Shown here: one piece after another, positions 15,222 to 62,830 of the stretch
How positions within the stretch are numbered: position 1 is the first letter of the stretch
Layout: every line of letters starts with the position of its first letter
NCBI RefSeq assembly: GCF_030144855.1
Contig: NC_082707.1
Coordinates: 124,248,001-124,312,000 of the forward strand
Length of the DNA stretch: 64,000 nucleotides
DNA from: Hypanus sabinus
Lineage: Eukaryota
Reading direction: 5' to 3'
Translations under genes and position numbers: made by a program
The notes under the pieces: model-generated
What the model saw: the letters and a program-made list of their open reading frames with translations, nothing else
What the model was told of the DNA's origin: nothing
The model's database searches: none

Positions 15222-15715
15222 GTGACCACAAATGCTGGAAAGCTGCAGCAACACTCTCAAAATGCTGGAGGATCTCAGCAGGTCAGACAGCATCCATGGA
15301 GAGATATGAACAGTCGTCATTTCAGGCCAAGACCCTTCACCAGGACTGGAAAGAAACAGAGCAGAAGCCAGAATAAAATGCCAGCAGGAGGGTGGGATAC
15401 ACAAGCTGGCATGTGACAGGCGAGTTCACCTGAGGGGGGGGAAGGTAGACAGGGAAGGGAAATGATGTGAGGAGTTGGGAGGTGATATGTGGAAGATGAC
15501 TGAAGAAGATTCAATCTGATAGAAGAGGGCAGTGGACCATGGAATAAAGGGAAGGGAAGTAGGGGAATCAAAGGGAGGAGGGTGAAGGCAATGGGAAAGT
15601 TGTGAGGCTGGGGGATGGGGAAGGGAAAAGAAGTGAAGGGGGCTAGTGGGGGGAAAACAGAAGGGAGTGGTTACTGAAAGTTAGAAAGAGGGAAATCAAT
15701 CTTCATGCCATATAG
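15222..15715 (-). mobile_element. Penelope-like element 3' part / pLTR carrying a decayed hammerhead motif
   Basis: Minus strand reads ATGGCATGAAGATTGATTTCC (as at the end of the 19.4-20.7 kb Penelope), a pyrimidine-rich spacer, then CAGTCCTGGTGAAGGGTCTTGGCCTGAAATGACGACTG and ATGGATGCTGTCTGACCTGCTGAG. Confidence 0.75.
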
Positions 15716-17899
15716 GTTTGAGACTACTGAAAAAAAATAGATGTTCCTTTATTCTGTGTCTAGGCTTAAAGGAGATCTGAGGGGTTTGACTTCAGAGACT
15801 AGCACACCAGTTTACTGAGGGGGTGCTGGATTTCAGATGAAGTGCCAGAGTGAGCTTCCTTCTGCCTCTGATGAGTTTGTGGTGACTACCGAGGTCTCCC
15901 CCAGATACTCTGGTCAATATTTATCCCTTAAACATATTGAGGGATATGGGGCAAGTGCCAGAAGGTGGTGCTGAGGTAAAAGATCAACTTGGTCTTGAAT
16001 GGCAAACATCTGGCTGCTCTGAATTTAGGGGCCAATTCACTGATTCTGACTTTTTAAAAAAAACTGAAAATAGATGAAAAGATTCTATCGCCAATGTCTG
16101 TGGAAGTTCCTGTGCTTAAATTACCAGCTGTGTTTTACACTATAACAACAATTAGGCTTCAAAGGTACTTCACTGACTCTGGGTACCTCACAATCACTCT
16201 ACAAATACAAATCTCTCAACTATCTGACAGGACTCACCACAGGTCTGTTAAACCCTCAGAGATGACAACACCAAATGTGTTGAACTTATATTGAGACTGT
16301 GACCAATTTCTCCTTACCACCCAGCTCCAGGTGGAGGTCTGATCCACACTGCTCCAGAAACAGTATCCTCACACTAAACCTTTGCAATTAAGGGTTTCAA
16401 TTATGCTCTCACCATTTGTCAGTAGTGAGTCCTCAGTCAGAGTATAAATTTGGCACAAAACTCCCAATAAAACTTCTCTGAAGTTCATGGCGCTGCCTGT
16501 GAACGAGTGGATTTGTGCTTGCAAAGTACTGTAGACCTCAATCCCTTAACTGTGTACCTCCTGCCAGTTCACAGCACCCAGACAGATAGAGAACACAGAG
16601 TTTCTGATCAATGATACTCTGCTACATGATGCCAACCTATGTTCTGATCTACTGCCTACCTCAGGGGCAGATGACGGCAGCACCGGCTGTGGATTTGATG
16701 CTGAGATCATGAAATGTAGAGGAGGGGAAGTGGAGAGGTGGTAACGAGGAGCGGGACAAACTGAGAAAAGAAAGTTAGAAAACCACAGAAACATGAAATG
16801 AAAACAATATTCTGGTAATGATCAGCAGGGTAGTCAACAACAGTGCAAAGAGAAACAGAAGCATTAATTCAGTTTCTCCACAGGTGCTCCCTAACCTCCC
16901 AAGTATTTCCAGTGTTGTTTTCTTGGTGAGGGAAAAGTGAATTGGAACAAGGTTGTTTTTAACTGGAAGCCATGTTCAGGGAAGTAGTGACTGGTGCATG
17001 AATTTGGTGGAAAGAGGCATGACTATATGAAATTTTAAATGTTTTCACAATCAATTTGATCAGGACCAGTTCCCTACAATGTACAAGTTTTGTAGAAGAC
17101 TCGAGGGTTTTCCTTTCCCATTTATTGCCAAGATTTTTCAGTGTATGGGTGGCATCTAGATTCTGGGTTACAACATGTCTGCACCACCATAAGTAAGATA
17201 TTATAACAGCTCAGAAAACGTCGAGGTTATCGCAAGCATAAATCTATCAGACAACACTCCACTCATTCCCCAGACTGCTCTGTGGGTTTAGGGAAGAGCA
17301 AAGATTAAATCTGATACAGACACGATAGACATGAAACAGCAAGTGCAGGAAGGTTTCCAAGAATGCAGCTCTGTAGACAGGAAGCTACTTGGCCTACCAA
17401 GATCCAAATGATCCAATTAAATGAAAAATCAAAAAGAAATTACAGAAACTGAATGTCCAGAAGTAGACAATGCTAGAAACACTTAGCAGGTCAGGTAGCA
17501 TCTGAGAGAAGAGAAATAAGTTAACATTTCAGTTCTGGTATAGTCTTCAACCAGAAACATTAACCTTATTTTCTTTCTTCAGATGCTACCTGACCTGCTG
17601 AGTATTTCCAGCATTTTTTATTTTTGATCGAGCAATTCAATAGGTTCAATTTTACTTGTTTTTTTATTCACTGGCTATAAACATTTGAAGTTATACTTAA
17701 ACATTTTCCTTCAAATGCTGCTAATGAATAGTCTTCTACCACTTTTCCCCCCGATTGAGCCTTCCAGTTTATAACACCCCATTAAAAACAAATTCTGCGC
17801 TCCTCTTGTTTTCACCACTGCTTCAAATCTGGCATCTTCAGGACTGTGGATCGACAAAAGTAGAAACTACCAGATCAAAATCCTCCCCTCCTGGGAAGC

Positions 17900-18870
17900 T
17901 CAACTAGAAGATTAAGATCATGGGATCCATGGTGAATTGGCTGTTTGGATTCAGAACTGGCTTGCCCATATGAGACAAGAGGGTAGTGGTTGAAGGGACT
18001 TATTCTAGCTGGAGGTCTGTGATTAGTGGTGTTCTGTGTTGGGACCACTATGGATGGAGAAATGGCAGATGGAGTTTAACCCAGCCAAAAATTAGTGTTG
18101 CACTTTGGTAGGTCAAATGCACTAACAGTGCACTGTTAGGGCAAGGCCTTTAACAATATTCATAGGCAGAGGGTCTTGGGATTCAAGTTCATAGCTCCCT
18201 AAAAGTGGCTACGCAGATTGAGAGGGTGGTTAAGAAGGCATATGGCATGCTTGCCTTTATTACTTGTGGCATTGAGTTCAAAAGTCTGGAAGTTATGTTG
18301 CAGCTTTGTAAAACTACAGTTAGGCCATATCTGGAGTATTGCATAGTTCTGGTCATCCCGTTATAGGAAGGATAAAGGCTTTGGAAAAGATGCAGAAGAG
18401 GTTTACCAGGATGTTGCCTGGATTGGAGGGCATGTGCTATTACAAGAGATTGGACAAACATGGGTTGATTTTTCAGGAGCAGCGAAGGCTGAGGGAAGTT
18501 CTGATATAGATCTGTATGATTAGAACAGGCATAGATAGACAACATCCTTTTCCAAGGGTTGAAATGTCTGATACCAAAGGGCATGCATTTATGGAAAGAG
18601 GGAGTAATTTTAAAGGAGATGAGTGGGAATTTTTTTTTAAATATATACATAGCGTGGTGGGTGTCCAAAGTATGCTGCCTGGGGTAGCGGTAGAGACTTT
18701 AAAGAGACATTTAGTTAGGCACGTGAATGTGAGGAAAATGGAAGGGTATGCATATTGTGTAGGCTGAAGAGGTTAATTTAGTTTGCCTTTTGATAACTAA
18801 TGTAATCGGTTCAGCTCAGTATTGTGGGCCAAGGTGCCTGTCCCCGTGCACTACTGTTCTCTGTTCAATA
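17900..18870 (+). mobile_element. CR1 LINE 3' ~1 kb with internal deletions
   Basis: Recognisable segments KLRSHGI.GEL..WIQNWL, VRPYLEYCI and QKRFTRMLPGL, plus the CR1 3'UTR. Confidence 0.85.
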
Positions 18871-19202
18871 ACGCTGCCATTAAATCTTTCCCTAGTACAG
18901 CACATCTATCAAAACAACACACGCTCCTGTAGCCGTTTCAACGAACTGAGGTCCCTCATATTTTGTAATTCAGTTAAATCATCTCTTTTCCTTCTCTGTG
19001 CTGTTATGTGCCCGAGTAGAATAAGGCCTTTGTTTAAGCAAAGGTTCAAAGGCCAGCTTCCAATCCAGTCTCTGCAGGGCTGTCACTCAAGAGCAAATCA
19101 ATGTGCCTGGCACAGTGTAATATGCCATCAAAACTGAGCAATTGCACCACACTGGACAAATCCTATGCAACATTAAAAAAACATTATTTTCACCATGGAT
19201 GT

Positions 19203-19365
19203 TCATAAGACCATAAGACATTGGAGCAGAATTAGGCCATCTGGCCCATCGAGTATGCTCCACCATTCAATCATGACTCATCCTTTTTTTTTCCCCTCCT
19301 CCTCAACCCCAGTTCCTGGCCTTCTCCCCGTAACCTTTGATGCCAAGTCCAATCAAGAACCTAAG
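19203..19365 (-). mobile_element. CR1 3' tip
   Basis: CATAAGACCATAAGACATTGGAGCAGAATTAGGCC is the reverse complement of the tail seen at 360-398. Confidence 0.8.
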
Positions 19366-19371
19366 AGAACC

Positions 19372-20680
19372 AGTCCCTATACATCTCCACCAGGAAGGCC
19401 TCAAAGTTCTCCATTTTTTTCTGAACACTAGACCCAACGGATTCCACTCCACCACCATTCTCCTCCGTCTGGTGGAACTTGACCTCACTCTCATTAATTT
19501 CTCCTCCCACTTCCTTCAAACAAAATGTGTAGCCATAGATACTCCCATGGGTCCCAGCTATGCCTGGCTCTTTGTTGGCAATATGGAACAGTCTATGTTC
19601 CAAGCCTACACTGCAGTCACTCCGTCACTTTTCCTCCACTACATCGACAAATGCATTGGTGCTGCCTCCTGCACACAATGCCAAGCTCATCAACGGTATC
19701 AACTTCTCCTCCAGCTTCTACCCAGCCCTCAAACTTACCTGGTTCATTTCCTACAACTCCCTCCCCTTTCTTGATCTCTGTCTCTATCTCTGGAGACGGC
19801 TTATCCATTGATGTCTGTTATAAACCCACTGACTCTCATAGCTACCTCAAATATCCCTTTTCCCACCCCATTACTTTTAAAAATGCAATTCCTCCATCTA
19901 TGCCACATCAGCCCCTAGGACAAGGCCTTTCATTCCAGAACAAAGAGGATGTCCTCTGTCTTCAAATAAAGGGGCTTCCCTTCCTCCACCATCAACACTA
20001 CCCTCAACAGCATCTCTTCCATTTCACGCACGCCTGTTCTCACCCTATCCTCCCGCCACCCTATCAGGGATATGGTTCCTCTTGTCCTCACCTACTTCCT
20101 CAACTACTACTCCACCAGCCTCTGTGTCCAGCACATAATTCTCCACAACTTCCGCCATCTCCAACAGGATCCCACCATAAAGTACATTTATTTATCACTC
20201 CCTCCCCCAATTTCTGCTTTCCGCAGGGATCGTTTAAGTGACTCCCTTGTCCATTTGTCCCTCCCCATTGATCTCCCTCCTGGCACTTATCCTTTGCAAG
20301 AAGAACAGGTGCTATACCTGCCCCTACTCCTCTGCCCTCACTACCATTCAGGGACCCAAATAGTCCTTCCAGGTGAGGTGATACTTCACCTATGAGTCTT
20401 TTGGGGTCATATACTGTGTCTGGTGCTCCCAGTGTGGCCTACTGTATATTGGTGAGACCCAGCATGGATTGGGAAACTGCCTCGCCAAGCTCCTGTCCGC
20501 TGGAAAAAGCGGGATCTCTCAGTTGCCACCCATTTCAATTCCACTTTCCATTCCCATTCTGACATGTCAATCCAAGGCCTCCTCTACTGTCATGATGAAG
20601 CCACACTCAGGCTGGAGGAGCAACACTTTATATTCTGTCTGGGTAGCCTCCAACCCGATGGCATGAACATGAAATTCTTG
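19372..20680 (+). mobile_element. Penelope-like element (RT plus GIY-YIG endonuclease), decayed
   Basis: HQEGLKVLHFFL...LLRLVELDLTLINFS.HFLQTKCVAIDTPMGPSYAWLFVG.MEQ...LFLHYIDKCIG (PLE RT, YIDD motif decayed), LPFLDL, YKPTDSHSYL. GIY-YIG segment GVIYCVWCSQCGLLYIGET at ~20404-20460. Confidence 0.9.
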
Positions 20681-28530: not shown

Positions 28531-30379
28531 GTGGACGACACTCAATCTGCCCCATTACAGCCCTGAACCTTATCATCCATCTACAGTGTATTTTCTCTGT
28601 AACTATATTCTGCATTGTGTTATTGCTTTTCCCTTGTACTACCCTGATGTGATGGAATGGTCTGTATAAAAGGCAGCATGTAATGCCAAGTTTTTCCCAC
28701 TGCATTGACAATAATAAACAAAGTTGGCAATTTGTCATCCCTAAGCTCCATGACCTGCATTGACTTCTGGTGCCAAATTCAGAATTCTAACCACATTCCT
28801 AGCTCTCATCTATAACCCTGCTGAGCTGTGAGCTCTGGCCTCCTGTCCATCGTGCACTCACACACTCTTGACATCCATGTCCTGAGCTGACCAGGCAGCA
28901 AGTCTCAAAATACCATCACTAGCTTTCTTTACCTTATTTGCATTCTACACCTACCTCCTTAATTAGCAAAGCTGATTAAATGCTTGATCATCTCCACCTC
29001 TGCCTCATAACCAAATTGCATTAGAGGATTGCTCCCAACTGATTATTACACATTGCTCCCAATGAGCACTCAAGTTAAAAGATTATGTAACGGCACTCTG
29101 GTCCCTCCAATCCCCGACAGCTGGCACTTTGTAACCAATTCTGAATACTGACCAGTTGCCTCATGATCTGATACAGCAATACGAACGTACAGGAATGCAA
29201 GGAGCTGGGAGAGTAGTGGAGTCAACCTAATATATCACAGGCACATTCTTCCTCACCACCTAAAGTGTCTACATGAGGTGCTGTCTCATGTCATCTACAA
29301 GAAGATGACATCCAAAGATCCCCACATTTCTAGGCTATGTCATCTTCTCATGGCCACCATTGGGCAGGAGGTAGAGAAATATGAATTATCACACCATGAG
29401 GTTCAACCCAATGAAACACACACAAAACACTGGAGGAATCCAGCAGGCCAGGCAGCATCTATGGAAAAGAGTAAACAGCCGATGTTCTGAGCCGAGACCG
29501 TTCATCAGGTTGAGCTTCCACTTGGATCTGGAAACCAGCACAGCTCAAATTACTATTTATATCACTGCGACCACTTTGCTTTATAACGGACATCTTTCTT
29601 TCATTCTAATTGTGCTCTTGCTTATATAATTTTGTGTAATTCATGTTTTCTTGGAAAAGATGTGAATTCAATACTATGTGCCAGTGATGCTGTTGCCAAG
29701 TGAATTTTTTGTTGACCCTGTATATTTACATGGAGCACTGCGACAAGAAAACCAACCATCAAACACCCCCACCATCCAGGCCATATCCTCTTCTCACTAC
29801 TGCCATTGCGTCAGGATGCACCAGTAAGCTCAGGGACAGTCACTACCCTACAACTGCCATCCTCTTGATTTGGCATGAATGACTTCATTCACCACTACTC
29901 TGAACTGATTCTACAAACTACAGCTTAGGTTTCAAGGACTCTTTACATCTCTTGTTCTCAGTATTATTTTTATATGCACTTTTTTTTTTACACTTTGGTG
30001 TTTGTCAGTATTTTGCTGTATGAGTGTCATTTTTTTTTGGAAAAGTCTACTGTATTTCCTTTTCCCTGTGAACGTCTGCAAGAAAATTAACTTCCAGGTA
30101 GTATATGGCAATGAATACACATTGATAAACAAACTTACTTGAAAACTTTTACTTGTACTTGGGCAGATGGCCATAAGTTAGACTCAGCTGGATCACAGGC
30201 AGTTTTGGTGAACAAGGGTTCTATCCACAGTATAACAGATTCATTGAAGATCAAGAAACTACAGGCTCCTTCCCCATATATTTGCAACTACGAAAATAAT
30301 TTGCATTAATGTGGCACCTTTACAACCCAAGAACACCCATGCTCATGTTGTACTTTTGAAATGTAGACACTGCTTCATG

Positions 30380-30939: not shown

Positions 30940-32989
30940 TATTGGAAACATTACTCACTGGGCAAAGGTCTGTGTGCAAGATATAACTTTCAGCTGTCAA
31001 GAGAAGAGCTGGTTTAAAAATGTTCTCACATTCACAGTGCAAGAATAAGAATCAGCAAACCGGTTACCCGGTTACTATCTTTGATAGTAAAACACCTGGA
31101 AGTGCACCACAACATCATAATCAGTCCAAATCTGCTCTGCGTGCAGCAAGTTAATGATAGATCACCGGAACATTAGCCAAAGCAGCAGCCTTTAAAGAGC
31201 AGTTAACAGGAGAGGGTGTAAGAGAAAGGTACAGAGAAGAAATTCTAGGGTGAAGAGCTAAATAACCAAGAAATACATTGCAGCCAAAACTGGAGCCATG
31301 GACAATGGTGAGATGATGTACATGGCACCTTAAAAAGCAAGTGGTCAATTAATCTACCAACCCACACACATTTGGGGGGAGTAGAAAACACCCAAAATAA
31401 CCGCATCCAAGGATCACTAATATGCTCGATCAGCACAGTGAATTCATGAGTCTTGCATTTACAAATTTTAGTTAGAATTCTGCTGGCAGCCAGACCAGAG
31501 TGAGGTGCTTGAGCAAACCATAATCTAGGCTGCAGTATTGTCCAGTGAGACTTCTCTTCTCACATAGGCAGGAGTAGATCACTCAAAACAACTCCTCAAC
31601 CATCCCTTCAGATTCTGACAGAGTCACACTGCTACCTGTGGGATGAGTTGCTGCCCCCATTCCCTACCCTTGAATTGGAAGTAGCACAAGATCAGACACC
31701 ACGAAAACAAAACAGGCTAAATAAGTGCACCTGACGAAGGGTTTCCACCTGAAACAACGACTGTGCTTCTTTTTTTTCCACAGATGCTGCCTGTCCTGCT
31801 GAGTCCCTCTAGCATTCTGTGTGTGTAGCTCGGATCTCCAGCATCTGCAGATTTTCTCCCGTTTGTAAATAAAGCCACTGTCAGTACCATAACTTTACTC
31901 CAAAGACCATGGCAGTGTGGTGTGATCTAAATAAAATTAACACCACAGCGGATATTGGAGCATCTCTGTCTCTCCTCTTCTAGGGAGTTTCTTATATTCA
32001 CCTAAGGAATCAATGCACCATGCAATCACACAATTAATCACACTCTTCAGCTCTTCACCCACAACCAGGCAAATTTTTCCTCTTGCAGGGCCTATCCAAT
32101 TTTACTTTCAAAGGAATGAATGAATGAAACTGCTACCATTTTAGGCACTAAAGACTACAAATCACCTCATTAACACAACTTTTCATTTTGCCCTTGGATC
32201 TTTTGCCAACAATCACCATTCATTTGTGACCCACCTGTCAGTGGAACTAGTTACGAGGAAGGACCGGGGCAACTTGATTTTTTTCTCTTTTACTGTCTTT
32301 TTAATGTGCCAAAATGCTTCAAAGCCAGCAAACTATCTTTGAAGTTCAGTCTGTGTAACTTAGGAAATGCAGCAGCCAAACTGAGCACAGTAAATACCTC
32401 AATAGTAATGTGATAATCACAAAATAACCTTCAGGCAGAAAGAAATTTCCAGGAACATTTTGGCTAACACTTCCATTTTCCTTTAAAACGCAATGCCGGA
32501 TCTATTACCACCAACTGAGTGGGTAGACAGAGCCTTAACTCAAAAGGTTTTTCTTGTCTCTTTATGGTTGTCAGATGATTATTGTGTTTAACTGAGGTGC
32601 AGAATTTAGGAGATAGCATTTTTTTAAAAAACAGAAGGTCAAGATCCATCTGTTCCCCCTTCAATATTGTGGTCATCACATAATATACCAGATAGTTACT
32701 ACAGCAATGACACAAACTGTTAATCCACATCAGAACAGAATGCAAATAGAGGAAAGACTAACAGAGAGAAACTTTGGTGACCCTGGGTCAAAGTATAATT
32801 TCTATTTACATAGACTAAGTGTGAATTGTTGAAAGAGCAGCATTTACTACCCAACATTAAGTCTTCTTGAAAAGGTAAATAACCTACAACCTCACTCATT
32901 TGTGAGTGACTGTATTCCTTAAGGTTGTTATAGCCGGGGTTGATAAAGGGACAATATCCCACTTTTTATAAATGCTCCCAATGGCATGC

Positions 32990-33460: not shown

Positions 33461-35689
33461 AGATGTGTATTCCTACCATCCTGAACACCTACAGGCATTT
33501 GACCAAGATGGAAATCAAATGTTTTTTATTACAAGATGGAAGTGTTCCCATGCATCTGCTATCCTAGAGAGGTAGGGATAAGGGTGCTGGGATTATTGTG
33601 TTTTCAACAGTAAAGAGTTTCTACAAAGTATTGGAGAAACAGTAGTAGTAAGACAGTGGTGCACCAAATGTGGAGTAAATATTTAAAATTAAGTACAAAG
33701 TACCGAACGAATAGACCATTTAACTTTCCATATTATTTGGACTGAACATCACCAAACAGAACACATTCCTTCACACCCTTAATTTGTGCACCCTAAATGG
33801 AGAAATGCTTTTGGAATCCAAGAGGCGAGTGACCCATCACAAATACTCAAATTCCACCAGTGATGGAATGGGCCAGGTGTCAACTCGCCAGTCAGTTTCT
33901 GCAGAGTGTTGAAAGTGGAGAGTTTGACAATGGTTATACTGTTGAATAGGAATATAGGTAGATTTTCTAAAGGAGTAGTCACTGCCTGGCATGACATAAC
34001 TGTTACCTGCAACCGATCAGACCAAGCCCGATTAAAGCTTTACTCTATCCTTCAATATATTGTTAATGGATTTGAATAATAATACACACTATCAATGTTC
34101 AACAGATTCTTTAATACTTCACAAAGATTGGAAGATGGCAAATATACCCATCTATTCCAGAAAGAATAAAAAAAGAGACACCATAGACCAGTTAGCTGAT
34201 ATCTGGAGTAGGGCTAGAATGTTAGAATCTATCATTAAGGAAGGGGCCAATAGGTTAATAGGAGTCTGAGCTGATTTATAAAAAGGAATCAATGTTTTAC
34301 AAACTTTGTACTTAGCAGAATAAATGTAAAAAAAAGTGTTATATCAGCACTTTTAAAACAAATTCAATATGACTCCGCACAAGAAACTACGTATTACATA
34401 AAATTAGTGTATGTTATTGGAAATAATTAACTTGCATGGGTTGAAGGCTGGTTAGCAGACAGAAAACAAAGTAGCAATAAAGGGGAATCAAAATGTTGAT
34501 TGTTTAGATATCCAGCATTTTTCATTTCCTGGTTTACATCATAATGGCTGTTTATCTTATGCTTCTTGTATCAATACAGCCTTTGAGATAGGTTCCACCA
34601 CCTTACCATTAACAGTCGTTACGTAGACCAAGCGGCTTAATGTACTCCAATTGTTAAAACAGCTCAACCCTGTCTGTTACAGACATCACCTTTCTTCTGC
34701 ACAAAGGGGATGTCTTTGTTCTCTCCCATATTCTTTCCTATTGAAAACTAACTTGACTCTTTCCCAGTTCCGATAAAAGGTCACGGACCTAAAACATTGA
34801 CCATCTTTTTCCACAGGTGCTGGCCAGTGCTCCCGACATTTTCTTTTTAATCAGATATTCGGAACAGGAAGGTTACTTTTGAGTTGGAAGAATGTAATTA
34901 ACGGGGCTCTGCCTTGCTCCAATTGCATAGGTCCCTGGTCTGCCTGCAAGTATCATGTACATAACCTGCAGATGTACTGAAGGAAGAATAGTTTCAGTAG
35001 AGGGAGTGCAGTGAAGCACACTACAGTGATCCTCCATGTGATGGGCTTGTTGTATGACAAGTGATGAACACTGAGTTCAGTTTATGCCATTAGAAAATAA
35101 GTCATTCAAGTTCATCATATTTTATTTGTGGACAGGAAGTGTCTGCATTGATTCCTAGCCTTCACAGTACCACAGAATTTGGAAAGAATAACATTTATTT
35201 AGTGCATGGTAGGTGTTGATGGTTGGCATACAGCAGATGGGCAGAAGGGCACATTTCCATGGACCTCTATTCTACTTGTTATATCACTACATATTGAGGA
35301 GAGTCACGGGGTTAACTTCATCTCAAGCATGACACAATTGCTGCGTGTCATGTCTCAAAATAGCCATGTACTGTATCCAAAAGCAGGTACGAGAAAGGGC
35401 TCATTTGGAAACATATGGCCCTTTGATAATCTTTTACCAGTTGGTTGCCAGCACTTTATTTTTGCAAGTTCTTGTGGATTGATCACCTCCCATCTTCTGT
35501 TAGCTTGACATTATGCTGATAGGGTGTCGATCAGCACCCACTTGGACAAGCAGGCCAGCTCATGCTGTTTCCCACTTAACTGTAACAAGCGGACAAATGG
35601 ATCTCAACGATCTGAATGTAAACTGGGAGGAACACTAGAGAAAAAAGCTTCATGCTGAGCATGGGAACAAAAATAACATCACTATTCAA

Positions 35690-42400: not shown

Positions 42401-44174
42401 ACAGGTCTCCCAGCGGTGAAATGCTGCTCATCCTCCAAGCCAGCTTTGCCATACCTTAAAAACCAATAGTTGGAAGAACTCAGCAAGTCAAACAGCAACT
42501 GCGGCTTGACTCATTGAGTTCTTACCGAGTGGTGTGCTATTTGCTAAATTTACAATGTCTATCGTCCCTTGCTACTCCATCCTCTTCTTCCTACCTTTCT
42601 TCATTCTGCCTCATCTTCATACTTCTTTCTTCCTCTTGCCCTTAAATGCATCTACAGTATTCTACACCGTAAGCCTTAGAGAGATCCACTATTTCCATAC
42701 CAGGAGAAAAAGCAAAAAGAGATCTTTGTAAAACTTACTGGAGATAGTTTTTGATAACCTGCACTCTTCCAAATGCAAACATAATGCCTACCTCTAACTT
42801 GCTAAACAGTGCCATAATATTAATGAAGCCCCTATCAGTGAAAGTACCACTATTTTGCTCAGGCTTTCCTGAATTCTTTCTTATAAATCCTGTTGCACTG
42901 CCTTTTGAATTTTCATACCTATATCACATCAAAGAGAAATGTGAATATCTCAGTAAGATGTATCAGATTTGAAACAGAGGACTTTACAAAGGAAGGACTG
43001 ATAAAGGATATAATCTCGAACTCTACCCGCAATTACATAGTAACCTTACACCAGTAGGGTTACTATGTAATTTAGTGCACAGTACAGGAGGTGTGATGGG
43101 CGACCTGAATTTCTGGCCAATGTCTACCTGCCACTGCATTGATTTATCGGGCAGGAGTATAGAGGGAAGAGTCACAGTGAATCGACATGCACGCTTGTGT
43201 TTTAGGGACAGCAGTTATCATTCTGCCTCCCCTTGCACCAGGAAGAGGGCAGAAGACGACAGTTTAAATGTGTCTGTCAAAGGACACGGCTGCCACTCAG
43301 TGGGAGAACACACACCGGGGGAAGTCAGAACTTCAAACGCAGCACCTATGGGTCTCAACCCAAAACATCCCGTCCATAGGCGCTGCCTGACCTGATGAGT
43401 TCCTCCTGCATTTTGTGTGCATTGCTCAAGATTTCCAAAGTCTCACATTTTCTCAGTGAGAGAAGATCCCCACCCACCACACACCAACTCCAACAATCCC
43501 CATACCACACAAAGAAAATGGGATATAGACAGAGAAATAAACAAACTCCAAAAAGATCATTCAAATTCAACTTGGGGTTGCAGTACACAACTTCAATTGT
43601 CTGTGCAAATAAACAAGCGTCTCTTTGTACTGCATCAAATAGACAGAGGCTCATTTCGAAAGCTGCACCCTATCCAGACAGCTGTCCCTCTGCTGCTCAG
43701 AAAATGTAATTCAGTGGCTATGGTGTTACGCTCCAGCTCCTGGTGAGACAAGCTCGACATATACCAGCTAAGAGACTCCAGCACCAGCACATGTGCCAGC
43801 TGGTAGTCAGTTACACAGCACCAGTACAAACCTAAAAGTTGGTACTGATATATTTTTGTCACGGGTACCCGAATACAATGGGGAAAAATTGTTTGCGTGC
43901 CATGCGGACAGATCATACCATGCATTAGTACACAAGGTAACAGAATGCATACTATAATGTTATCACTGAGGACCCCTTCACCCAGGTTATGCCTTGTTCT
44001 CACTGCTACCATTAGGAAGGTGGTACAGAAGCCTGAAGGCATACACTTCATGATTCAGGAGCAGCTTCTTCTTATCTGCCATCCAATTTCTGAATGGACA
44101 CTGAACCCACAAACATTACCTCACTACTTTTATTATTTCTATTTTTGTACTACTTATTAAATATATATATACCT

Positions 44175-45699: not shown

Positions 45700-45902
45700 N
45701 NNNNNNNNNNNNNNNNNNNNNNNNNNNNNNNNNNNNNNNNNNNNNNNNNNNNNNNNNNNNNNNNNNNNNNNNNNNNNNNNNNNNNNNNNNNNNNNNNNNN
45801 NNNNNNNNNNNNNNNNNNNNNNNNNNNNNNNNNNNNNNNNNNNNNNNNNNNNNNNNNNNNNNNNNNNNNNNNNNNNNNNNNNNNNNNNNNNNNNNNNNNN
45901 NN
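45700..45902. other. Assembly gap (run of N)
   Basis: 203 consecutive N. Confidence 1.
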
Positions 45903-47730: not shown

Positions 47731-49028
47731 TTGCCGTATTGTAGGAAATGCACCAGCTGATTCGTACACAAAATCCAGTTATCAGCTTCAGTGACATTGA
47801 TGGCGGTTTAAATACTGGTAGAGGCACCAGAGAGAAGCAACTTTCTCAACCTCAAACAGCATCATAGACCTTTTCAGTCCGCTCGAGTGTGTATCCACCC
47901 AGGCCTCGGTTTAACACTTCATATGAAAGATGAAACCACCAACATGCTAGATACTGTACATACACTTCTTCAGCACGACTTGGACCCAAAACACTCTGAC
48001 TGTGTTGAAAATATCAGCGCTGAGCCTAGACTGATGCCAACAACTCCAACCAGTGGTGCAAGAGTAATTTTCATGCTTGGCTTGCTTAGTGTACTGACTG
48101 ATGCAGCATTCCTTATGGGTTGAACAGACTTTGGACAATTGCAATGGTGTCCTCCACAGACATGCATTGCCCCCTTAAGGGCACTACTTGGGTACTCTCT
48201 CCGAGAGGCCAGCTAACTGGTACACTGTCAGTTTCTGACATCAGGTGAATTACTGATGCATATTAGAAGAAACTGTGCTAAATGCTATTTGACAGATTGT
48301 TTCACATCTACAACATGGGCCCCCATGGCACTGCTGCAGATTTATTCATGTCTCAAGGCTCTTATCCACCTTTGTCTTTCAATAATAGCATGATATGCCA
48401 GGTGCGTGGAACAACGCTGTAATTTCACTTAAAAGGCAGAACAATTATCTCTCCAGTGAAGTACGACTGTGGGACTCAAGACCAGTTGATCTCAAAAGAC
48501 ACAAGTGTGTCTTTAAAGTTTCTGCATAAAACTGGACATCCGAGCCTGGATTTATTGGATGAATGATTAAGAAATTGGAAATATTACAGACCAAGTACTT
48601 CACGTTCCATGAGAATTTCTTGTACAGTGCTTGCATTAGATAGTGTAATATAATAGTGGGATGAACAGGAGGTACAAGCAATAAAAACAATGTTAATCAC
48701 GTTCAGATAACGATACTTCAACCACACACTTCATTCGCAAGCCTTGCACAAACGTTTTGACACACCACCAGGTTAAATTTCACTTAGTTCACCCAACCCC
48801 ACTCCAAGAGTATAACCACCAATCCTACACCCCCATCCCTGAGCACAGCTTGCAACTCTCTTTCAGAAACAATTTAAGTTCTAAGTCCTCCTTTGGTAAT
48901 TTTCCTGTGGTGGGCACAGTGCAAGATTCCAGACCTCCACCTCTGCACAATAAACCCTTGGAATATTGAAACTATCGATATTACCAGCTACATGATAGCT
49001 GAAATAGAGATAAACTTCTAACCATATA

Positions 49029-49347
49029 CCAAACATGAGGAAATCTGCAGATGCTGGAAATTCAAGCAACACACACAAAATGCTGGTGGAAAGCAGCAGG
49101 CCAGGCAGCATCTATAGGAAGAAGTATTATAGTAAGGTTGGGATTGGTGCGGAGGGAGCGGAGAGCAGAGCGTTCGGAAGGAGAGAGATTGCAATTGGAA
49201 CACGGTGTGGTGAAGTCAAGACGGTTGATGTCCTGTCAACAATTAGCAATAAAGAGATCCAGAGCAGGCAATAGACCAGAAGATCCACTTCTCCCTATAG
49301 ATGCTGTCTGTTCTGCTGCATTCCATCAGGATTTTGTGTGTGTTGCT
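49029..49347. mobile_element. Penelope pLTR-derived fold-back element with a ~160-bp unrelated spacer
   Basis: Inverted arms at ~49064-49125 and ~49287-49348. 10-bp TSD TAACCATATA (49019-49028, 49348-49357). Confidence 0.8.
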
Positions 49348-49582
49348 TAACCATATAGTTAAGAGATTTATCTCTATATCAGTAATCACGTAACTGGTGA
49401 AGTACAATGTCAGAGCAGGGTTCCAAAGTATTAAAAACATTTCCACTCACACTACTGCCCAGCATCTCAAAACTCTTATCCTTTCTCAGTCTTCTGAGCA
49501 GACTAAACTTATCCCTATCTTTTCCATTCCCAACGGAAATAAAGTGCTTTCCATTAACCGGTAGAATCCCAATGCGCCAAAT

Positions 49583-52200: not shown

Positions 52201-55200
52201 GTAAGAGAGTTCCAGTTGGCATCACATGACCAGCCGGTGCCGCTCCTTTACACATGCACAAAGCACTTGATCAATACGTTGATCGATCAAGTCTATGGGT
52301 GTGAAGGCCGTTCCCCTACTGAGAGTAAATTCTCTTTATTAAAGCAGAATACAACACATTTCAACATCACCAGCAATCACTCTAGCGTTTGCTACAGAGA
52401 GTTTCAGAAGTCACCCATACTCAGGCGGGTGCAGTACATGAATTCTTTGCCAGGGGAGTTACCAGGGGAGACCCAACAGAAGCCCTAACTCACTCAGCCC
52501 ATCTTTATATGACATTCTCTACAATACAGACAGTACCCTGGTAAATTTCCTCTGCACTGTCTCTGAAGCCACTCCCTTCCTATAATAAAGTGATCAGAAC
52601 TGAACACAATACTCCCAGTGTTGTCTAACTAGAGTTTTACGGAAATGCAACATTACCTCAAGGCTCTTGAACACAATCCCTCATCACACCATACTCCTTC
52701 ATAACAACCCTATTTGTTAAGAATTTTGTCTCCCCAGAATATATAGATTAACCATAACAATGAGCAAAACAAAAATGCCCTGGCCATTAATGTATCGCTC
52801 TGTGGAGAAATTGCTACATGCATGTCAGTTGCTTCATCTCCTGCATTGCAACATGATGTTTTGTTGGCCGTGAAGCACTTTCGACCGTCCCAAATTGCAA
52901 AAGACTCGTCAAAAATTCTGAAGATTTCACTCTGCCCAGAGACAGTGCCAATAATCACACTGCATCTTCCTCAGCCAGAGGGGAGGGTCACAGTTGCTGG
53001 ATTGAGGTTGAAAGATGCTGAATGAACAATTGTTAGAGCATCACCTGGGGGAAGGTCAACAACAAGAATGTCATGGCAGGAGCAATGGCTGAAATCCTCT
53101 GCAATTTGCTTTTACCTTTTGAAACATGATACATACCTTTGAGCTTACATCATTATGACTGCTTCAGTTCTGGGCACTGCTCAGTGTAGCTTTGTCATCC
53201 TAGTGTGTAAAGTACAATCAACTGGTTGTTTCCTTTGCTCTGAACTCCTTATTCGGGTACTATTCAAAGACTGGTATGGTACGTATAAATAGGCAAGGCC
53301 TTGATTTATAATCTTATCCTCCCATCTTCCAGGTAACACCTTAAACCATAGCACTCTCTACCTATTAAATAAATTTGAGGGCATTTTCAAGGAAAACCAG
53401 GAGCATTCTCCTTCGTGTTTAAGATAGTACTTTTCCCCCACCATTCATCATCACTGACAGATCCAAAACCACAAAAGTACAGGGGTTTTCAAAGCTGATG
53501 AAAGGGTCATACACTTGAAATGTTCATTCTGCCCTCCTTCAACAGATACTACCTGACCTGCTGAGTTTTTACAGCACTCTTTTTTTAATTAAAAACTGAC
53601 TATCTGATCTCTGTTCCAGATCCAACTGCACTCCTTTATAGGCAGCACCCTCTAAGACTGAGGATGACTTGCTCCTCAACAACAGTTCTCAGGGCGAGAG
53701 GTTACTGAAGTTTCTTTTGAAGGATCTCGGACTCAGACAGAACTTGGTATCGGCGATATGAGAAGGGAAGTACAATACTCATTCCTTTTTTTACATAGGA
53801 CTCTGTACACTTGTGAATGGCTGAGGTTCTCAGGGCCCTCCTGAAGAGTCATGGGCTACAGATTTCTGTCTGCAGATGAGAATGTTACAGATTTTCAAAA
53901 AGGCTTGAATCTTTCAGTCTATTTGCATTCCTGCCTTGAAGGAGCTTGCAGCAGGGTCTGTTTTGGGAGTTAGATACTGAAAAATGCAGCCTGTTCATCA
54001 GAGTTGACTGAGCTTGACTAGATCAAAGCTGGAGAAGTTGGATTGAACCTTGGTCTGCTTATCCTGCCTGATTTTGCAAAGACGGTGTTGACAATATTCT
54101 GACAGTGATGGTAGGTCTCAGTGAGTAATCGGGGTTTCAATGAGGTTTGTGCTCGTCCTGAGGACATCTTCCCAGGAAAGTGAAAATAAGCTGGTACAGT
54201 GCCCCAGTAGATAAAAAATGCTCACTACATTCACTCTGGTTTTTGGGGGCGGGCGGGTGGTGAGAAAAACAGTAAGATATAGAGCCTTTCATAACCTTGA
54301 GTAATCTTGGCATCATTCACAAATATCGAAGGATTTACAAAATGTTTAAGGTACGAAACACAACAGTAAGTTCTCAATGAGCTATCTCCAGCAGAGGACA
54401 TTGTGCTAATGGGAAGATTATCATTTAATATTGACTATCATGAAAATAACTTCTCAGCTTTAAATCATGCACTGTAACCTTTTGTACACAAGATCTCAGC
54501 TTGACATCTCCTCCAATATGCTGCAAGGACAGAGATAGGAGATGATGACAAAAACACTTTCCCCACAAAAAGAACTACATTCAAAGTGATCCATTCTTAA
54601 TCTTGAGAGCAAGTAAAAGAAAATGACTAAGTTAATTCCTTGAGGCCCTGCTGGCTCATGCTAAATGATATGGTTTATTTTAGCATTAATGAAGGTGCTA
54701 CTTACTTACATACTAGTAAATGACTTTGGCTTTACGCAGAGAGTAGACCCCTCCACTGATACATCCAGTATTCCTCTCTCGGTCAAGATCCCAAGCAAAA
54801 CATTTCAATCATTTATTTCAGGGTTCTTGCTATACACTCTGAAAGGTTTTCTCTGTGACCATCTTCCTCCCATATTCCAAAATCTTGCAGGTCAGTAGGT
54901 AAAGTGGACAAAGTCTCTTGGGATTAGTATGAATGTCCAATGATCAGCATGGACGCAGTGGGCCATTTTGGGAACCAGGACGGATAAATTCACTCACCTC
55001 AACTGTAAACTGATTCCACCAGCTATAGACTCACTTTCAAAGACACAAACTCATGTCTCAGTATTATTTATTTACTTTTTGCACTATTCTTTTGCATAGT
55101 TGGTTGGTTGTCAGTCTATGTTTTCCATAAACTCTATTGTATTTCCTAATTTTCCTGTCAATGCGTCTCAGGGTAGTATATGGTGACATATACATACTTT

Positions 55201-58930: not shown

Positions 58931-58934
58931 TGGA

Positions 58935-59295
58935 GAATAGGGCCAGGGGTTGTGGGCGGGGGGGGGGGGGAGAGAAACAGGGCCGGGGAGCAAGGAGGGA
59001 TGAAAGAGAGGGGTACAGAAAGGAGAGGGGAATAGAAAAAGAGAAGCAAGGGCCAAGGAGGGAGGGGAAAGGGAGAAAATTGGCAGTGGCCAAGTAGCAG
59101 GAGAAAGCATGAAAACAGGGATGGAGAAGGCAAGAATGGCATGGTGGGAAGGCAATGCAATGGGAGATTGCAATAAATTCTTCTTTCTAGGTAAGTGGCA
59201 ATAAAGAAAAACAGAAGTTGATGGGACTTGTGAAAGAGAGAGACTGTACACTGAAAAGCAACAAGGAAAAAGAGAAGGGAAATGGGGGTGAGGTG
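58935..59295 (+). repeat. Purine-rich low-complexity tract
   Basis: Almost entirely G/A; produces spurious Pro/Leu/Phe-rich minus-strand ORFs. Confidence 0.8.
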
Positions 59296-59369
59296 ATAAA
59301 TCTGCACAGATTTGCACTGGGTTGAGTGGCCTCTTTCTGTGCTGCATTAACTGTGCGAAAGATGGGAAA

Positions 59370-60560: not shown

Positions 60561-60973
60561 CTCTCAGGGGAGACAGACATTCAACGCACCTCTCTCCCTT
60601 TATGCCTCAAACCTTTCCCAATGCAACGCCCTGCCCTCCGTTCAAGGATGCACCTGTGTGTGTGTTTGAACTCCCAGCTGATACAACGCGGCCAAACGGA
60701 GTGAGGGGAATACAAACCTTTGATCTTCACCCCAGTCCAATTCGGAAACATCATTCCACGAACACTCCCTCAGTCGGGGAGGGGAGCACCAGCATTATCC
60801 GGAGTTTGCTGTTCAGCCCGGGCAGAAAATGTCCTCTCCAGTCTAAAGGGCTCTACTACATGTAATGGGCCTTGATAAAGAAAATGGAAGGTAGGGTCAG
60901 CTGGGTAAAATGGGGTAAGAGAGTTGGAGGGAAGGATGTGGACTAAAGGGCTCACTTTTCTCATTCTTCACTT

Positions 60974-61009
60974 GTCCTGATGAAGGGTCTCAGCCCAAAA
61001 CGTCAACTG
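60974..61009 (+). ncRNA. Minimal type I hammerhead ribozyme motif (decayed) in a Penelope pLTR fragment (60974-61078)
   Basis: GTC-CTGATGA-A-GGG-TCTCAG-CCC-AAAA-CGTC-AACTG: CUGAUGA core, helix II GGG/CCC, GAAA mutated to AAAA, GUC cleavage triplet. Confidence 0.7.
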
Positions 61010-61214
61010 TCTGTCTCCATGCATAGATGCTGCCTGACTTGCTGAGCTCCTCCAGCACACTGTGTGTATTGCTCCAAGTATTAAGCGTTGTCGGCCACCT
61101 ATCTGCCTGTTCTATCAGGTTGCTGAAATCTCCCCAAGACGATTACTCTCCCCCTCACGGCTCACTGCATCTCCAAGTCTTGACCACCTTACAATCAAAT
61201 GCTGACTGTTCCAT

Positions 61215-62375
61215 TTACCAAGAGAGTTCTCATCCGTGATCCTGACCACAGTTTACGTACCACCATCAGCCGACTATAATCAGACACTTGAGATACTGTG
61301 TGATGCCATCAGCAAACAACAAAAGGTCCACTCCTACATATTTCAAATCACAGTTGGGGATTTCAATCAGGCTTGTTTGAAGAAATCTTTCTCCAATTAC
61401 CGTCATATAGCACCAGAGGTCTTACATACCAGACCAGTTCTATAAAGAATCCCTACAATTCCATGCCCAGACAGCACTTTGAGGAATCCGATCACTTGGC
61501 TGTCCTTCTCCTACCTGCATACAGGTAGAGGAGCAGCTCCAGAATGCTTTGAGTCAGTGGACTGGGCCCTGTTCTAGGACTCAACTGTGGACCTGAATGA
61601 ATACACCATGGTTGTCACAGACTTGTTTAAAAACAGTCAAAGCCGGAAGTGTTGCCACAAAATCTTACAGCGTCTTCCCCAACCAGAAACCCATGATGAA
61701 GAGTGAGATCTGCAATCTGACGAGGGCCAGGTCAGCAGTATTCAAGTCTGGCAACCATTAAACTTACAAGAGGTCCAGGAATGACCTCCAGAAAGCCATG
61801 GGTGAAGTGGCAATTCCAGACTAAACTTGAATCAATGAAGGATGCTCAACAGTTGTGACAGGATATGAGTACCATCACCTCTTACAAAGTGAAATCAAGC
61901 AACATGGGTTACAACAGGGATTTGCTTCCGGATGACCTCAATGCCTTCTATGTTTGCTTTGACTGTAAAACCATCACAAACTCCCACAGCCCCTGATGAT
62001 CCCGTGATTTCAGTTTCTGAGCCTGACGTAACAGCATCCTTCAGGAGGATGAACTCAAAGAAAGCATCTGGCCCAGATGGGGTACCTTATTGAGTAATAA
62101 AGACCTGTGTTGATCAACCGGCTGGGGTGTTCTCTGAGATCTTTAACCTTTTTCTTTGACATTTTGAGATACCCACCTGTTTCAAGCAGGCTTCTATTAT
62201 ACCAGTGCCAAAGAAAAATGTGGTAACCTGCCTCAATGATTATCATCCAGTAGCACTTAAATCCAGTGTGATGAAGTGTTTTGAGAGGTTAGTGAGAACT
62301 CCTGCCTGAGAAGTCACTCTCAAATTTGCCTACCGGAATAACAGGTCCACAGCAGACACCATCTTATTGGCTCTT
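61215..62375 (+). mobile_element. Rex1/Babar LINE internal fragment (endonuclease to RT), decayed
   Basis: ILTTVYVPPSAD...[60 protein letters not shown]. Confidence 0.9.
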
Positions 62376-62554
62376 CTTGACCATACAATCAACCCCGCAA
62401 TCTGAGCAGGACACAATATGCTGGAATCTGGTACAATGCACCAACTGGGCAGGTCAGGGAGCATCTGTAGATGGCACAGAAGTGGACAATGGACCTTAAG
62501 TCAATACCATCTGGGCTGATTCAATCCCTCTTTAACACAGGGTGTGATAGTTCT

Positions 62555-62830
62555 ACTGCAACAAAAAATCTGCTGGAAGAACACAGCGGGTCAAGTAGCA
62601 TCTCTGGGAGGAAATGAATTGTCAGCTCTCCAGGTTGAAACCCTGCAGTTCTTTTTCCCTCCCACAGATGCAGTCTGACCTGCTGAGTTTTTCTAACTGA
62701 TTGTTGCTCCAGATTCCAGCATCATCTTCTCAGTCCTGAAGAAGGATCTCACCCAAAATGTTGACTGTGTTCTTTTCCATGGATGCTGCCTGACCTACTG
62801 AGTTCCTCCAGCGTTTTGCGTGTGATCTTC
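62555..62830 (+). mobile_element. Penelope pLTR-derived cluster: a fold-back (62555-62725) plus a tandem arm with a hammerhead motif (62731-62767)
   Basis: CAGTC-CTGAAGA-AGG-ATCTCAC-CC-AAAA-TGTT-GACTG, then ATGGATGCTGCCTGACCTACTGAGTTCCTCCAGCG. Confidence 0.7.

What the first reader, a model, noticed from the sequence alone, without database searches (positions are those of the whole stretch)
15311..62767. Dispersed family of minimal hammerhead ribozyme motifs carried by Penelope terminal repeats
Seen: about eight related motifs. Plus strand: 31731-31763 (CTGACGA AGGG TTTCCA CCT GAAA CAAC GACTG), ~34765-34802, 53495-53524 (CTGATGA AAGG GTCATACA CTT GAAA TGTT), 60974-61009 and 62731-62767. Minus strand: 15311-15347, 29476-29510 and 41963-42000. 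Their consensus CAGTC-CTGATGA-A-GGG-TCTCGG-CCC-GAAA-CGTC-GACTG folds as helix I (CAGTC/GACTG), core CUGAUGA, helix II (GGG/CCC or AGG/CCU), GAAA and a GUC cleavage triplet, with almost no helix III. Established: Penelope-like elements carry minimal type I hammerheads in their pLTRs, proposed to cleave as dimers. Inference: this genome has a very high-copy ribozyme-bearing repeat (about one per 8 kb here), mostly non-autonomous and retrozyme-like, driven by the RT/GIY-YIG element seen at 19.4-20.7 kb. Every copy in this window has at least one lesion; only the consensus is intact.
Basis: partly seen in the sequence, partly recalled or inferred. Interest (0 to 1): 0.8.

Follow-up and report, generated by a model that had tools for sequence, protein, structure and literature searches.

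The report
Decayed Penelope-element hammerhead ribozyme copies
The eight motifs are real but dead, truncated copies of the small hammerhead ribozyme motif that sits near the 3' end of a very abundant Penelope-like retrotransposon, a kind of ribozyme-bearing repeat already described in other animals.

Summary
All eight motifs exist at the stated places. A covariance model built only from copies outside the window finds seven of them at E of 2e-16 to 0.018. The eighth (53495) is marginal but is followed by the family's tail.

- It occurs exactly 166 times in this 4.04 Gb genome.
- The 34-nt catalytic core occurs intact at least 6,812 times.
- The reversed-pattern controls found nothing.

The motif lies 245-296 nt downstream of the stop codon of a reverse transcriptase plus GIY-YIG open reading frame. 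It sits about 60-105 nt before the element's 3' end. This held in 11 of 11 copies chosen by their RT alone.

It has the published hallmarks of Penelope-element minimal hammerheads: an extra base after A9, a G10.1-C11.1 pair, and a palindromic ACGU in place of helix III.

The window copies are single, 5'-truncated, CpG-decayed retrocopies. They are not tandem, retrozyme-like units. The RT fossil at 19.3-20.7 kb is broken and lacks its own ribozyme end.

Not shown here: cleavage, helix covariation, and a tandem pLTR arrangement.

This is a new member of a known kind and of low interest. First-stage readers of this scan noted the same family 267 times elsewhere in this genome.

One unexplained extra: many copies begin exactly at the first base of the ribozyme.

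The parts
15308..15351 (-). Hammerhead remnant, the best-kept copy in the window. The unit runs from about 15205 (3' end of the tail) to about 15576 (3' UTR of the element).
   Evidence: R1 64.3 bits, E 1.9e-16. Five differences from the intact form, including A6>G and U16.1>A. Upstream homology reaches -219.
29473..29516 (-). Hammerhead remnant plus tail. The copy starts near motif position 5.
   Evidence: R1 E 0.018. Ten differences, including G12>A and A13>G. Tail at 29447-29459.
31720..31766 (+). Hammerhead remnant (CUGACGA form) plus tail. The helix I 5' strand is missing.
   Evidence: R1 E 2.5e-5. U16.1>A and G16.2>A. Tail at 31783.
34762..34806 (+). Heavily decayed hammerhead remnant. 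Its tail carries a deletion.
   Evidence: R1 E 1.7e-4. Twelve differences, including U4>C, G8>A and G12>A. Alignment.
41960..42003 (-). Hammerhead remnant plus tail. The copy starts at motif position 3.
   Evidence: R1 E 1e-5. G12>C and helix II changes. Tail at 41936-41948.
53487..53532 (+). Marginal, strongly diverged hammerhead-like remnant plus tail. CUGAUGA and GAAA are kept, the helices are lost.
   Evidence: R1 E 0.39 only. Fifteen differences. The family tail GATACTACCTGACCTGCTGAG at 53545 supports membership.
60969..61012 (+). Hammerhead remnant plus tail. The copy starts at motif position 3.
   Evidence: R1 E 1.8e-12. Five differences, three of CpG type, including G12>A.
62728..62770 (+). 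Hammerhead remnant plus tail. The copy starts at motif position 1.
   Evidence: R1 E 7.5e-11. G12>A and helix II changes. Boundary at position 1.
43350..43391 (+).
   Evidence: R1 E 0.013, model positions 17-36. Tail at 43379.
5410..5500 (.). Fold-back pair: two head-to-head copies, each truncated inside helix II and joined at the palindrome GGCC.
   Evidence: Tails at 5410-5422(-) and 5488-5500(+). Boundaries at motif positions 21 and 28.
17467..17617 (.). Fold-back pair of decayed tails forming a long hairpin.
   Evidence: Tails at 17490-17502(-) and 17582-17594(+). The hairpin gives a sub-threshold Rfam MIR8643 hit (56 bits against a gathering score of 135).
62576..62693 (.). Fold-back pair of decayed tails.
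   Evidence: Tails at 62590-62602(-) and 62667-62679(+). Sub-threshold Rfam AEV_CRE hit caused by the hairpin.
49100..49310 (-). Tail without a hammerhead, joined directly to a fragment of the element's N-terminal coding region (an internally deleted copy).
   Evidence: tblastn hits to the N-terminal region of L079 at 49128-49310(-). Tail at 49100-49112, with its boundary in the spacer.
19301..20677 (+). Broken Penelope-like element ORF: RT core, a CKKNRCYTC linker and GIY-YIG. It is truncated at both ends and has no ribozyme-bearing 3' end.
   Evidence: Three-frame reading. tblastn with open RT and EN pieces from other copies, E 4e-41 to 4e-58. The sequence after the stop at about 20685 is unrelated to the family. 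Pfam found nothing on its own pieces.
45700..45902 (.). Assembly gap. Not part of the feature.
   Evidence: Run of N. The flanks carry no family sequence.

Best explanation
The motifs are dead retrocopies of the 3'-terminal part of a Penelope-like retrotransposon (PLE) that fills this genome.

Layout of the source element: one ORF (reverse transcriptase, a Cys-rich linker, a GIY-YIG endonuclease), then a pyrimidine-rich 3' UTR of about 250-290 nt, then the 38-nt minimal hammerhead, then a tail of 60-105 nt containing a conserved hairpin.

Parts of the 38-nt motif:
- helix I: CAGUC/GACUG, or only GUC/GAC in the commonest subfamily
- core: CUGAYGA
- one extra A after A9
- helix II: GGGU/GCCC with a CUCG loop
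- GAAA
- ACGU in place of helix III
- cleavage triplet GUC

Shown:
- The copies were made by target-primed reverse transcription starting in the tail. Most are cut short at the 5' end.
- After insertion they decayed, chiefly at the three CpGs of CCCGAAACGTCGAC.

Inferred from published work on other PLEs, not tested here: in the element's RNA the motif cannot close helix III by itself. It cleaves after GUC only when two copies pair through the palindrome, or when the element's own protein helps. What cleavage does for the element is not known. In this genome the retrocopies were not made from cleaved RNA.
For: Family and consensus:
- 166 exact genomic copies of the 38-nt form.
- 1,547 intact 34-nt cores with U at N7 and 5,265 with another base there. 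99 of the first 100 of these carry C.
- All reversed-pattern controls gave 0.

Link to the PLE:
- 11 of 11 loci picked by RT similarity alone carry the motif behind the ORF end ...LGSLQPDGMNIDFSNFR*.
- RVT_1 scores 32.7 bits, above its cut-off. GIY-YIG scores 19-21 bits, just under its cut-off. Both come from open pieces of these RT-selected copies.
- The RT query gave 23,328 first-look candidates.

Retrocopy anatomy:
- Two preferred 3' end points and variable 5' ends.
- Target-site duplications of 6-10 bp.
- Inverted 5'-truncated neighbours.
- All of this matches the published description of PLE insertions (PMC8557442).

Hallmarks of PLE minimal hammerheads listed in PMC4209133 (an unpaired base between 9 and 10.1, G10.1-C11.1, palindromic 15.2-16.2) are all read directly in the intact copies.

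Signs of constraint:
- Between subfamilies A and C the motif keeps 0.82 identity. The UTR beside it is at shuffled level (0.58-0.62 against 0.56), the tail is 0.61 and the ORF end 0.63.
- N7, the only free core position, carries 5,265 of the 9,861 single departures from the U7 form. The other 27 fixed positions share 4,596.

Decay: many window lesions are CpG-type. C>T and G>A at the same CpGs are the main variants in public contigs.
Against: - No Rfam hammerhead model matches, even at E up to 10, in the window or on four loci with intact copies. This is expected for a motif without helix III, but it means there is no curated-model support.
- No covariation. On 62 copies the pair statistics are no better than shuffles (92-108 of 500 reach the observed values). 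In the commonest subfamily the two outer helix I pairs are an A-A mismatch and a U-G pair, with no compensating change.
- Nearest-neighbour energies place the active double hammerhead (-19.9 kcal/mol) above two monomer minima (-25.4 together) and far above an inactive duplex (-33.7).
- No RNA evidence. Only contigs were available, and none was on record as RNA.
- The conservation comparison is partly biased, because the four subfamily A copies were picked through their motif.
- A full-length element with a repeat at both ends was not recovered.
Confidence: 0.85

Rival explanations
1. The short hammerhead-plus-tail units are a separate non-autonomous family (retrozyme- or SINE-like). On this view they have their own transcribed master copies, are mobilised in trans by the PLE enzyme, and perhaps cycle through circular RNA.
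For: - A discrete class of 100-140 nt units starts within about 2 nt of motif position 1 and is flanked by target-site duplications.
- A 2026 preprint derives animal retrozymes from PLE pLTRs and reports them in the one chondrichthyan it sampled (10.64898/2026.07.22.740005).
Against: - No tandem or regularly spaced copies in the window, and none seen in the loci.
- Each unit has one ribozyme, so it cannot excise a unit-length RNA.
- The short and long copies share the same subfamily variants and 3' ends, as expected if the short ones are by-products of the autonomous element.
Confidence: 0.1
2. The motif is kept for a job other than cutting, and its hammerhead core is a relic or only a side activity. 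Candidate jobs are a binding or positioning site for the element's protein, or part of the promoter and transcript start.
For: - In the Anolis Poseidon element, catalytic mutants of the hammerhead do not change insertion in vitro, cleavage needs the protein, and no RNA-seq reads end at the cut site (PMC11167929).
- Here no excess of retrocopy 5' ends falls at the cut site: 0 of 34 unbiased copies and 2 of 60 selected ones. There is a hot spot at the first base of the motif.
- The active fold is not favoured energetically.
- Naiad PLEs thrive without hammerheads (PMC8557442).
Against: Thousands of copies keep every catalytic nucleotide. The one position that differs between abundant intact lineages is N7, the one base the catalytic core does not need. 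A plain protein-binding hairpin would not be expected to preserve exactly the hammerhead core, the G10.1-C11.1 pair and a palindromic helix III stub.
Confidence: 0.2
3. The resemblance to a hammerhead is a chance feature of an ordinary repeat.
For: No Rfam match and no covariation.
Against: - All 13 core nucleotides, the extra base after A9, G10.1-C11.1 and the ACGU palindrome are present together, in the order of a type I hammerhead.
- The motif sits at the position where PLEs of many phyla carry the same motif (PMC4209133).
- It is the best conserved segment between subfamilies.
Confidence: 0.01

Closest known systems
Minimal hammerhead ribozymes (min-HHR) of metazoan Penelope-like elements (Cervera and De la Pena 2014, PMC4209133)
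   Same: - Type I order of parts and a full catalytic core.
- An unpaired base between A9 and G10.1, and a G10.1-C11.1 pair.
- No helix III of its own, only a palindromic 15.2-16.2 stub.
- A short, poorly defined helix I.
- Thousands of mostly solitary copies from truncated elements, and pairs on opposite strands a few hundred bases apart.
   Different: - Helix II here is 4 bp with a tetraloop, not the 6-8 bp of the Schistosoma and Drosophila examples.
- The family is far more numerous: about one copy per 6-8 kb of a 4 Gb genome, which extrapolates to some hundred thousand copies, against the 4,000-9,000 reported for coelacanth and Xenopus.
- Activity was not tested.
Poseidon element PAc of Anolis carolinensis (Frangieh et al. 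2024, PMC11167929)
   Same: - The hammerhead lies beside the region where reverse transcription starts internally, which leaves a 'tail' at the 3' end of insertions.
- Insertions do not derive from cleaved RNA.
- The element carries RT plus GIY-YIG.
   Different: - In PAc the ORF start lies inside the hammerhead, at the pLTR-ORF junction. Here the motif was seen only behind the ORF, and the 5' end of a full element was not recovered.
- The linker CX4CX2C between RT and endonuclease points to the Neptune/Nematis type rather than Penelope/Poseidon.
Animal non-LTR retrozymes (PMC7229834; preprint 10.64898/2026.07.22.740005)
   Same: A type I hammerhead of PLE origin in short non-coding units spread through a vertebrate genome.
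   Different: Retrozymes are tandem arrays with a ribozyme in every unit, and they give circular RNAs. The copies here are solitary, irregularly spaced and 5'-truncated.

Membership tests
Hammerhead ribozyme, type I | Catalytic core C3 U4 G5 A6 N7 G8 A9 ... G12 A13 A14 ... A15.1/U16.1 H17, in type I order | tested here: met
   Met by intact genomic copies: 166 exact 38-mers and 6,812 intact 34-nt cores. Not met by any of the eight window copies.
Hammerhead ribozyme, type I | Three helices around the core | tested here: inconclusive
   Helix I (3-5 bp) and helix II (4 bp) can form; the target structure scores -10.5 against an MFE of -12.7 kcal/mol. Helix III exists only as the palindrome ACGU, which would need a second copy. 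The double form is not favoured by energy.
Hammerhead ribozyme, type I | Helices supported by compensatory changes | tested here: not met
   On 62 copies, 92-108 of 500 shuffles reach the observed values. The copies belong to one family that decays neutrally, so the test has little power.
Hammerhead ribozyme, type I | Match to the curated Rfam hammerhead models | tested here: not met
   No hammerhead hit at gathering score or at E up to 10, in the window or on four loci with intact copies.
Hammerhead ribozyme, type I | Site-specific self-cleavage after H17 | not testable with these tools
   Only contigs of public runs were available, none on record as RNA.
PLE minimal hammerhead (min-HHR) | Unpaired base between 9 and 10.1, G10.1-C11.1, palindromic 15.2-16.2, no loop 3 | tested here: met
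   CUGAUGA-A-GGG...CCC-GAAA-CGUC read in the alignment of 62 copies and in the pattern matches. The criteria are those of PMC4209133.
PLE minimal hammerhead (min-HHR) | Physical linkage to a PLE | tested here: met
   11 of 11 RT-selected loci carry it 245-296 nt behind the ORF stop (one of them 146 nt, after a read-through).
Penelope-like element, EN+ | One ORF with a reverse transcriptase followed by a C-terminal GIY-YIG endonuclease | tested here: met
   RVT_1 32.7 bits (cut-off 29.6). GIY-YIG 19.4-21 bits (cut-off 22.6, so just below). The motifs GVIYCVWCSQCGLLYIGET and YIDD-like HYIDKCIG are read in the window.
Penelope-like element, EN+ | Pseudo-LTRs from partial tandems, inverted 5'-truncated neighbour, tail extension, heavy 5' truncation | tested here: inconclusive
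   Seen: 5' truncation, inverted neighbours (L075, L077, L080, L085 and window 5410-5500), and two 3' end classes about 40 nt apart. Direct tandem pLTRs were not seen.
Neptune/Nematis clades of PLEs | CX2-5CxxC zinc-finger-like linker between RT and EN (PMC8557442) | tested here: met
   CKKNRCYTC in the window copy and CKRNKCYTC in L070 and L074. No phylogeny was made, so the clade itself is not settled.
Non-LTR retrozyme | Tandem units each with a hammerhead; circular RNA | tested here: not met
   No direct repeat of 180 nt or more links neighbouring sites. Same-strand spacings are irregular, for example 1.76 and 3.03 kb. Circular RNA is not testable here.

The most novel reading that the evidence does not exclude
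The first base of the hammerhead marks the 5' end of the element's template RNA, either a transcript start in a YYANWYY-like CCAGTCC/TTAGTCC or a processing site. On this reading the element's enzyme often starts copying at the tail next to the 5' end of its own messenger. It then runs off after about 100-140 nt and scatters whole 'leader' copies (hammerhead plus tail, with target-site duplications). That would explain why a large share of the motifs in the genome are units starting at position 1. It would also place the ribozyme at the very 5' end of the transcript, where cutting would remove the cap.
Probability: 0.25. Interest if true: 0.5.

Novelty: new member of a known kind. Interest (0 to 1): 0.25.

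Why it matters
It matters little beyond annotation. Minimal hammerheads in Penelope-like elements have been known since 2014, and heavy 5' truncation, inverted neighbours and tails are textbook features of these elements.

The useful points are practical:
- The family is so abundant (about one copy per 6-8 kb) that it will be met in almost every window of this genome, and it should be masked as one repeat.
- Its fold-back pairs imitate microRNA precursors and viral RNA elements in Rfam scans.
- The thousands of intact natural copies, with N7 the only core position that differs between abundant intact lineages, make this genome a good place to ask what the ribozyme does for the element. That question is still open.
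- The pile-up of copy starts at the first base of the motif, with no pile-up at the cut site, is a small new piece of evidence on that question.

Tried and rejected
- **Rfam, window:** the gathering and E<=10 scans gave no hammerhead. The weak hits MIR8643 (17467-17617) and AEV_CRE (62576-62693) are hairpins made by fold-back pairs of the repeat. The others are also far under threshold.
- **Rfam, intact copies:** four loci with intact copies also gave nothing.
- **Pfam on the window's own broken ORF pieces:** nothing. Open pieces from other copies were needed.
- **Covariation:** no signal.
- **Public runs:** 19 coded runs, all contigs, none on record as RNA, shares up to 0.26. Laying four of them showed only that thousands of contigs carry the family, with CpG variants at 7433, 7434 and 7436 of L061. 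It gave no starts or ends, so nothing on expression or cleavage.
- **Protein atlas on the endonuclease piece:** only weak GIY-YIG clusters, no help on clade or host.
- **Full-length architecture:**
  - A pattern joining the tail to the most upstream shared ORF sequence found nothing.
  - A pattern meant to print the flanks of that sequence found nothing either, probably because of CpG variants in the 20-mer.
  - An apparent upstream tail in L073 proved to be an unrelated fragment.
- **ORF start inside the motif:** the AUG inside CUGAUGA was considered as an ORF start, as at the Anolis junction. It was rejected: the frame stops after 21 codons, and the commonest subfamily has CUGACGA.
- **Splice acceptor at TTTCCAG:** considered as the cause of the 5' boundary and rejected, because the short copies include the CAG.

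Full report
**Observation.** Each is followed, 12-16 nt after the motif, by the same block ...TTTCCATAGATGCTGCCTGRCCTGCTGAGTTCCTCCAGCATTTTGTGTG... The window holds about sixteen such tails, some without a motif and some in head-to-head pairs. I built a covariance model from 62 copies taken from other parts of the genome. It finds seven of the eight sites at E between 1.9e-16 and 0.018. The site at 53495 reaches only 0.39, but it carries the tail. The assembly gap at 45700-45902 is more than 2 kb from any copy and its flanks carry no family sequence, so it does not touch the finding.

**The consensus is real.** The window is part of a 4.04 Gb assembly.
- A 34-nt version with three helix I pairs occurs 1,547 times with U at N7 and 5,265 times with another base there. 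99 of the first 100 of these carry C.
- It occurs 11,408 times with at most one mismatch.
- Every reversed-pattern control gave 0.

So 'only the consensus is intact' holds for this window only. In the window every copy differs from the intact form at 5-15 places and has at least one disabling change. Many of the changes are transitions at the three CpGs of CCCGAAACGTCGAC.

**What carries it.** Thirty genomic copies found by similarity share a 3' end and differ in their 5' ends. That is the pattern of a retroelement copied from its 3' end. The longer copies run upstream through a pyrimidine-rich stretch into the end of an ORF (...LGSLQPDGMNIDFSNFR*).

I then searched the genome with the RT piece of the window's own fossil. 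This choice ignores the ribozyme. It gave 23,328 first-look candidates. All 11 fetched loci carry the motif behind the ORF stop, 245-296 nt downstream in ten of them. Open pieces of these copies match RVT_1 above Pfam's cut-off and GIY-YIG just below it. The linker between the two domains reads CKRNKCYTC, the CX2-5CxxC motif that PMC8557442 gives for the Neptune and Nematis clades. No phylogeny was made. Some copies keep open frames of up to about 796 codons. I note this only as a sign of recent activity.

**Anatomy of the copies.**
- All of the roughly 20 RT-bearing copies read are 5'-truncated at different points.
- Several have an inverted, 5'-truncated hammerhead-plus-tail copy just upstream (L075, L077, L080, L085; window 5410-5500).
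- The 3' ends fall into two classes about 40 nt apart.

These are the features PMC8557442 lists for PLE insertions: heavy 5' truncation, an inverted neighbour and a 30-40 bp tail. In the window no direct repeat links neighbouring sites, so nothing here is retrozyme-like. The RT/GIY-YIG stretch at 19301-20677 is frameshifted and truncated at both ends. It ends right after its stop codon without the ribozyme region, so it is a relative of the source elements and not their driver.

**Is it a hammerhead?** In the intact copies the order is:
1. helix I strand
2. CUGAYGA
3. one extra A
4. GGGU-CUCG-GCCC
5. GAAA
6. CGUC
7. helix I strand

That is the type I order with every core nucleotide. It also shows the three hallmarks that PMC4209133 gives for PLE minimal hammerheads: an unpaired base between 9 and 10.1, G10.1-C11.1, and a palindromic 15.2-16.2 with no loop.

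Two results point to constraint in the active lineages.
- Between subfamilies A and C the motif keeps 0.82 identity. The UTR beside it is at the level of shuffled sequence (0.58-0.62 against 0.56), the tail is 0.61 and the ORF end 0.63. The caveat is that the four A copies were chosen through their motif.
- Of the 9,861 single departures from the U7 form, 5,265 are at N7, the only core position free to vary. The other 27 fixed positions share 4,596.

Against this:
- No Rfam hammerhead model matches even intact copies.
- The helices show no covariation, and the outer helix I pairs are not maintained in the commonest subfamily.
- Energy rules place the double hammerhead (-19.9 kcal/mol) well above an inactive duplex (-33.7).

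These last points agree with the literature. Activity in vitro is low and occurs only as dimers (PMC4209133). In the Anolis element, cleavage needs the element's protein and is not required for insertion (PMC11167929).

**RNA.** No run on record as RNA holds the stretch and only contigs could be laid. Expression, cleavage and circular forms remain untested.

**An extra observation.** I sampled 34 tails without regard to the ribozyme. Fifteen run on upstream. Seven begin within -1 to +3 of the first base of the motif, five begin inside it, none at the cut site and six in the spacer. Of 30 copies chosen for an intact motif, 12-14 begin at position 1. Several of these short units have target-site duplications of 6-10 bp, so they are whole insertions of about 100-140 nt. 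The lack of starts at the cut site fits the Anolis result that uncleaved RNA is the template. The hot spot at position 1 is unexplained. [quoted passage not shown] Fold-back pairs whose loop is the hammerhead core (L034, L057) fit self-priming through helix I.

**Comparison and verdict.** This is the minimal hammerhead of a Penelope-like element, in a family not described in the papers I could read. It is of a kind known since 2014 in flatworms, insects, fishes, coelacanth, amphibians and reptiles.

The host looks like a cartilaginous fish. I did not verify it.

First-stage readers of this scan noted the same family 267 times elsewhere in this genome.

I built no consensus of the element or its ORF and singled out no copy.

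Noticed in passing
L031, L035, L037, L041, L047, L052, L053, L059 (motif at 1501-1538 of each); window 62731, 60974, 41963: Copy 5' ends pile up at the first bases of the hammerhead: 7 of 34 unbiased copies and 12-14 of 30 intact ones. Several such 100-140 nt units are flanked by 6-10 bp target-site duplications. No pile-up is seen at the cleavage site.
   Followed up: partly
window 17467-17617, 62576-62693, 5410-5500: Head-to-head pairs of the repeat form long hairpins. These draw sub-threshold Rfam hits (MIR8643 at 56 bits, AEV_CRE at 37 bits). They are a likely source of false microRNA or cis-element calls in this genome.
   Followed up: partly
L034 and L057, around 1460-1540: Fold-back insertions in which the two arms are tails and the loop is the hammerhead core. 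The inverted arm starts at or within a few bases of the helix I 3' strand. This fits self-priming of the cDNA through helix I.
   Followed up: no
window 49100-49310 (-): A tail without a hammerhead, joined directly to a fragment of the element's N-terminal coding region. It looks like an internal deletion or template switch of about 2 kb. It lies inside the hairpin that another first-stage note describes at 48983-49398.
   Followed up: partly
L065-L075, 60-105 nt after the motif: There are two 3' end classes. One ends after CAGCATTTTGTGTGTGTTG. The other ends about 40 nt further on, after CCAGCATCTGCAGATTTYCTC. The words AGATGCTG and CAGCATCT in the tail are complementary, so the tail can form a conserved hairpin. 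This may be the place where reverse transcription starts.
   Followed up: no
window 42473-42524 and 30375-30441: Two other near-perfect palindromes, with weak Rfam hits on both strands (Plastid-psbJ-4 and mir-9256). They were not matched to the Penelope family and were not examined.
   Followed up: no
window 32714-32741 (-): A weak match to the hammerhead model (E 0.037) with no tail noticed beside it. Not examined.
   Followed up: no
L079:825, L082:830, L077:870: Three RT-bearing copies start at nearly the same point (AAAGYGATT..GCAACCACCGACTGC) with unrelated flanks. Forty further copies are 95-97% identical over this stretch. This may be the true 5' end of a young subfamily, or a truncation hot spot.
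   Followed up: partly
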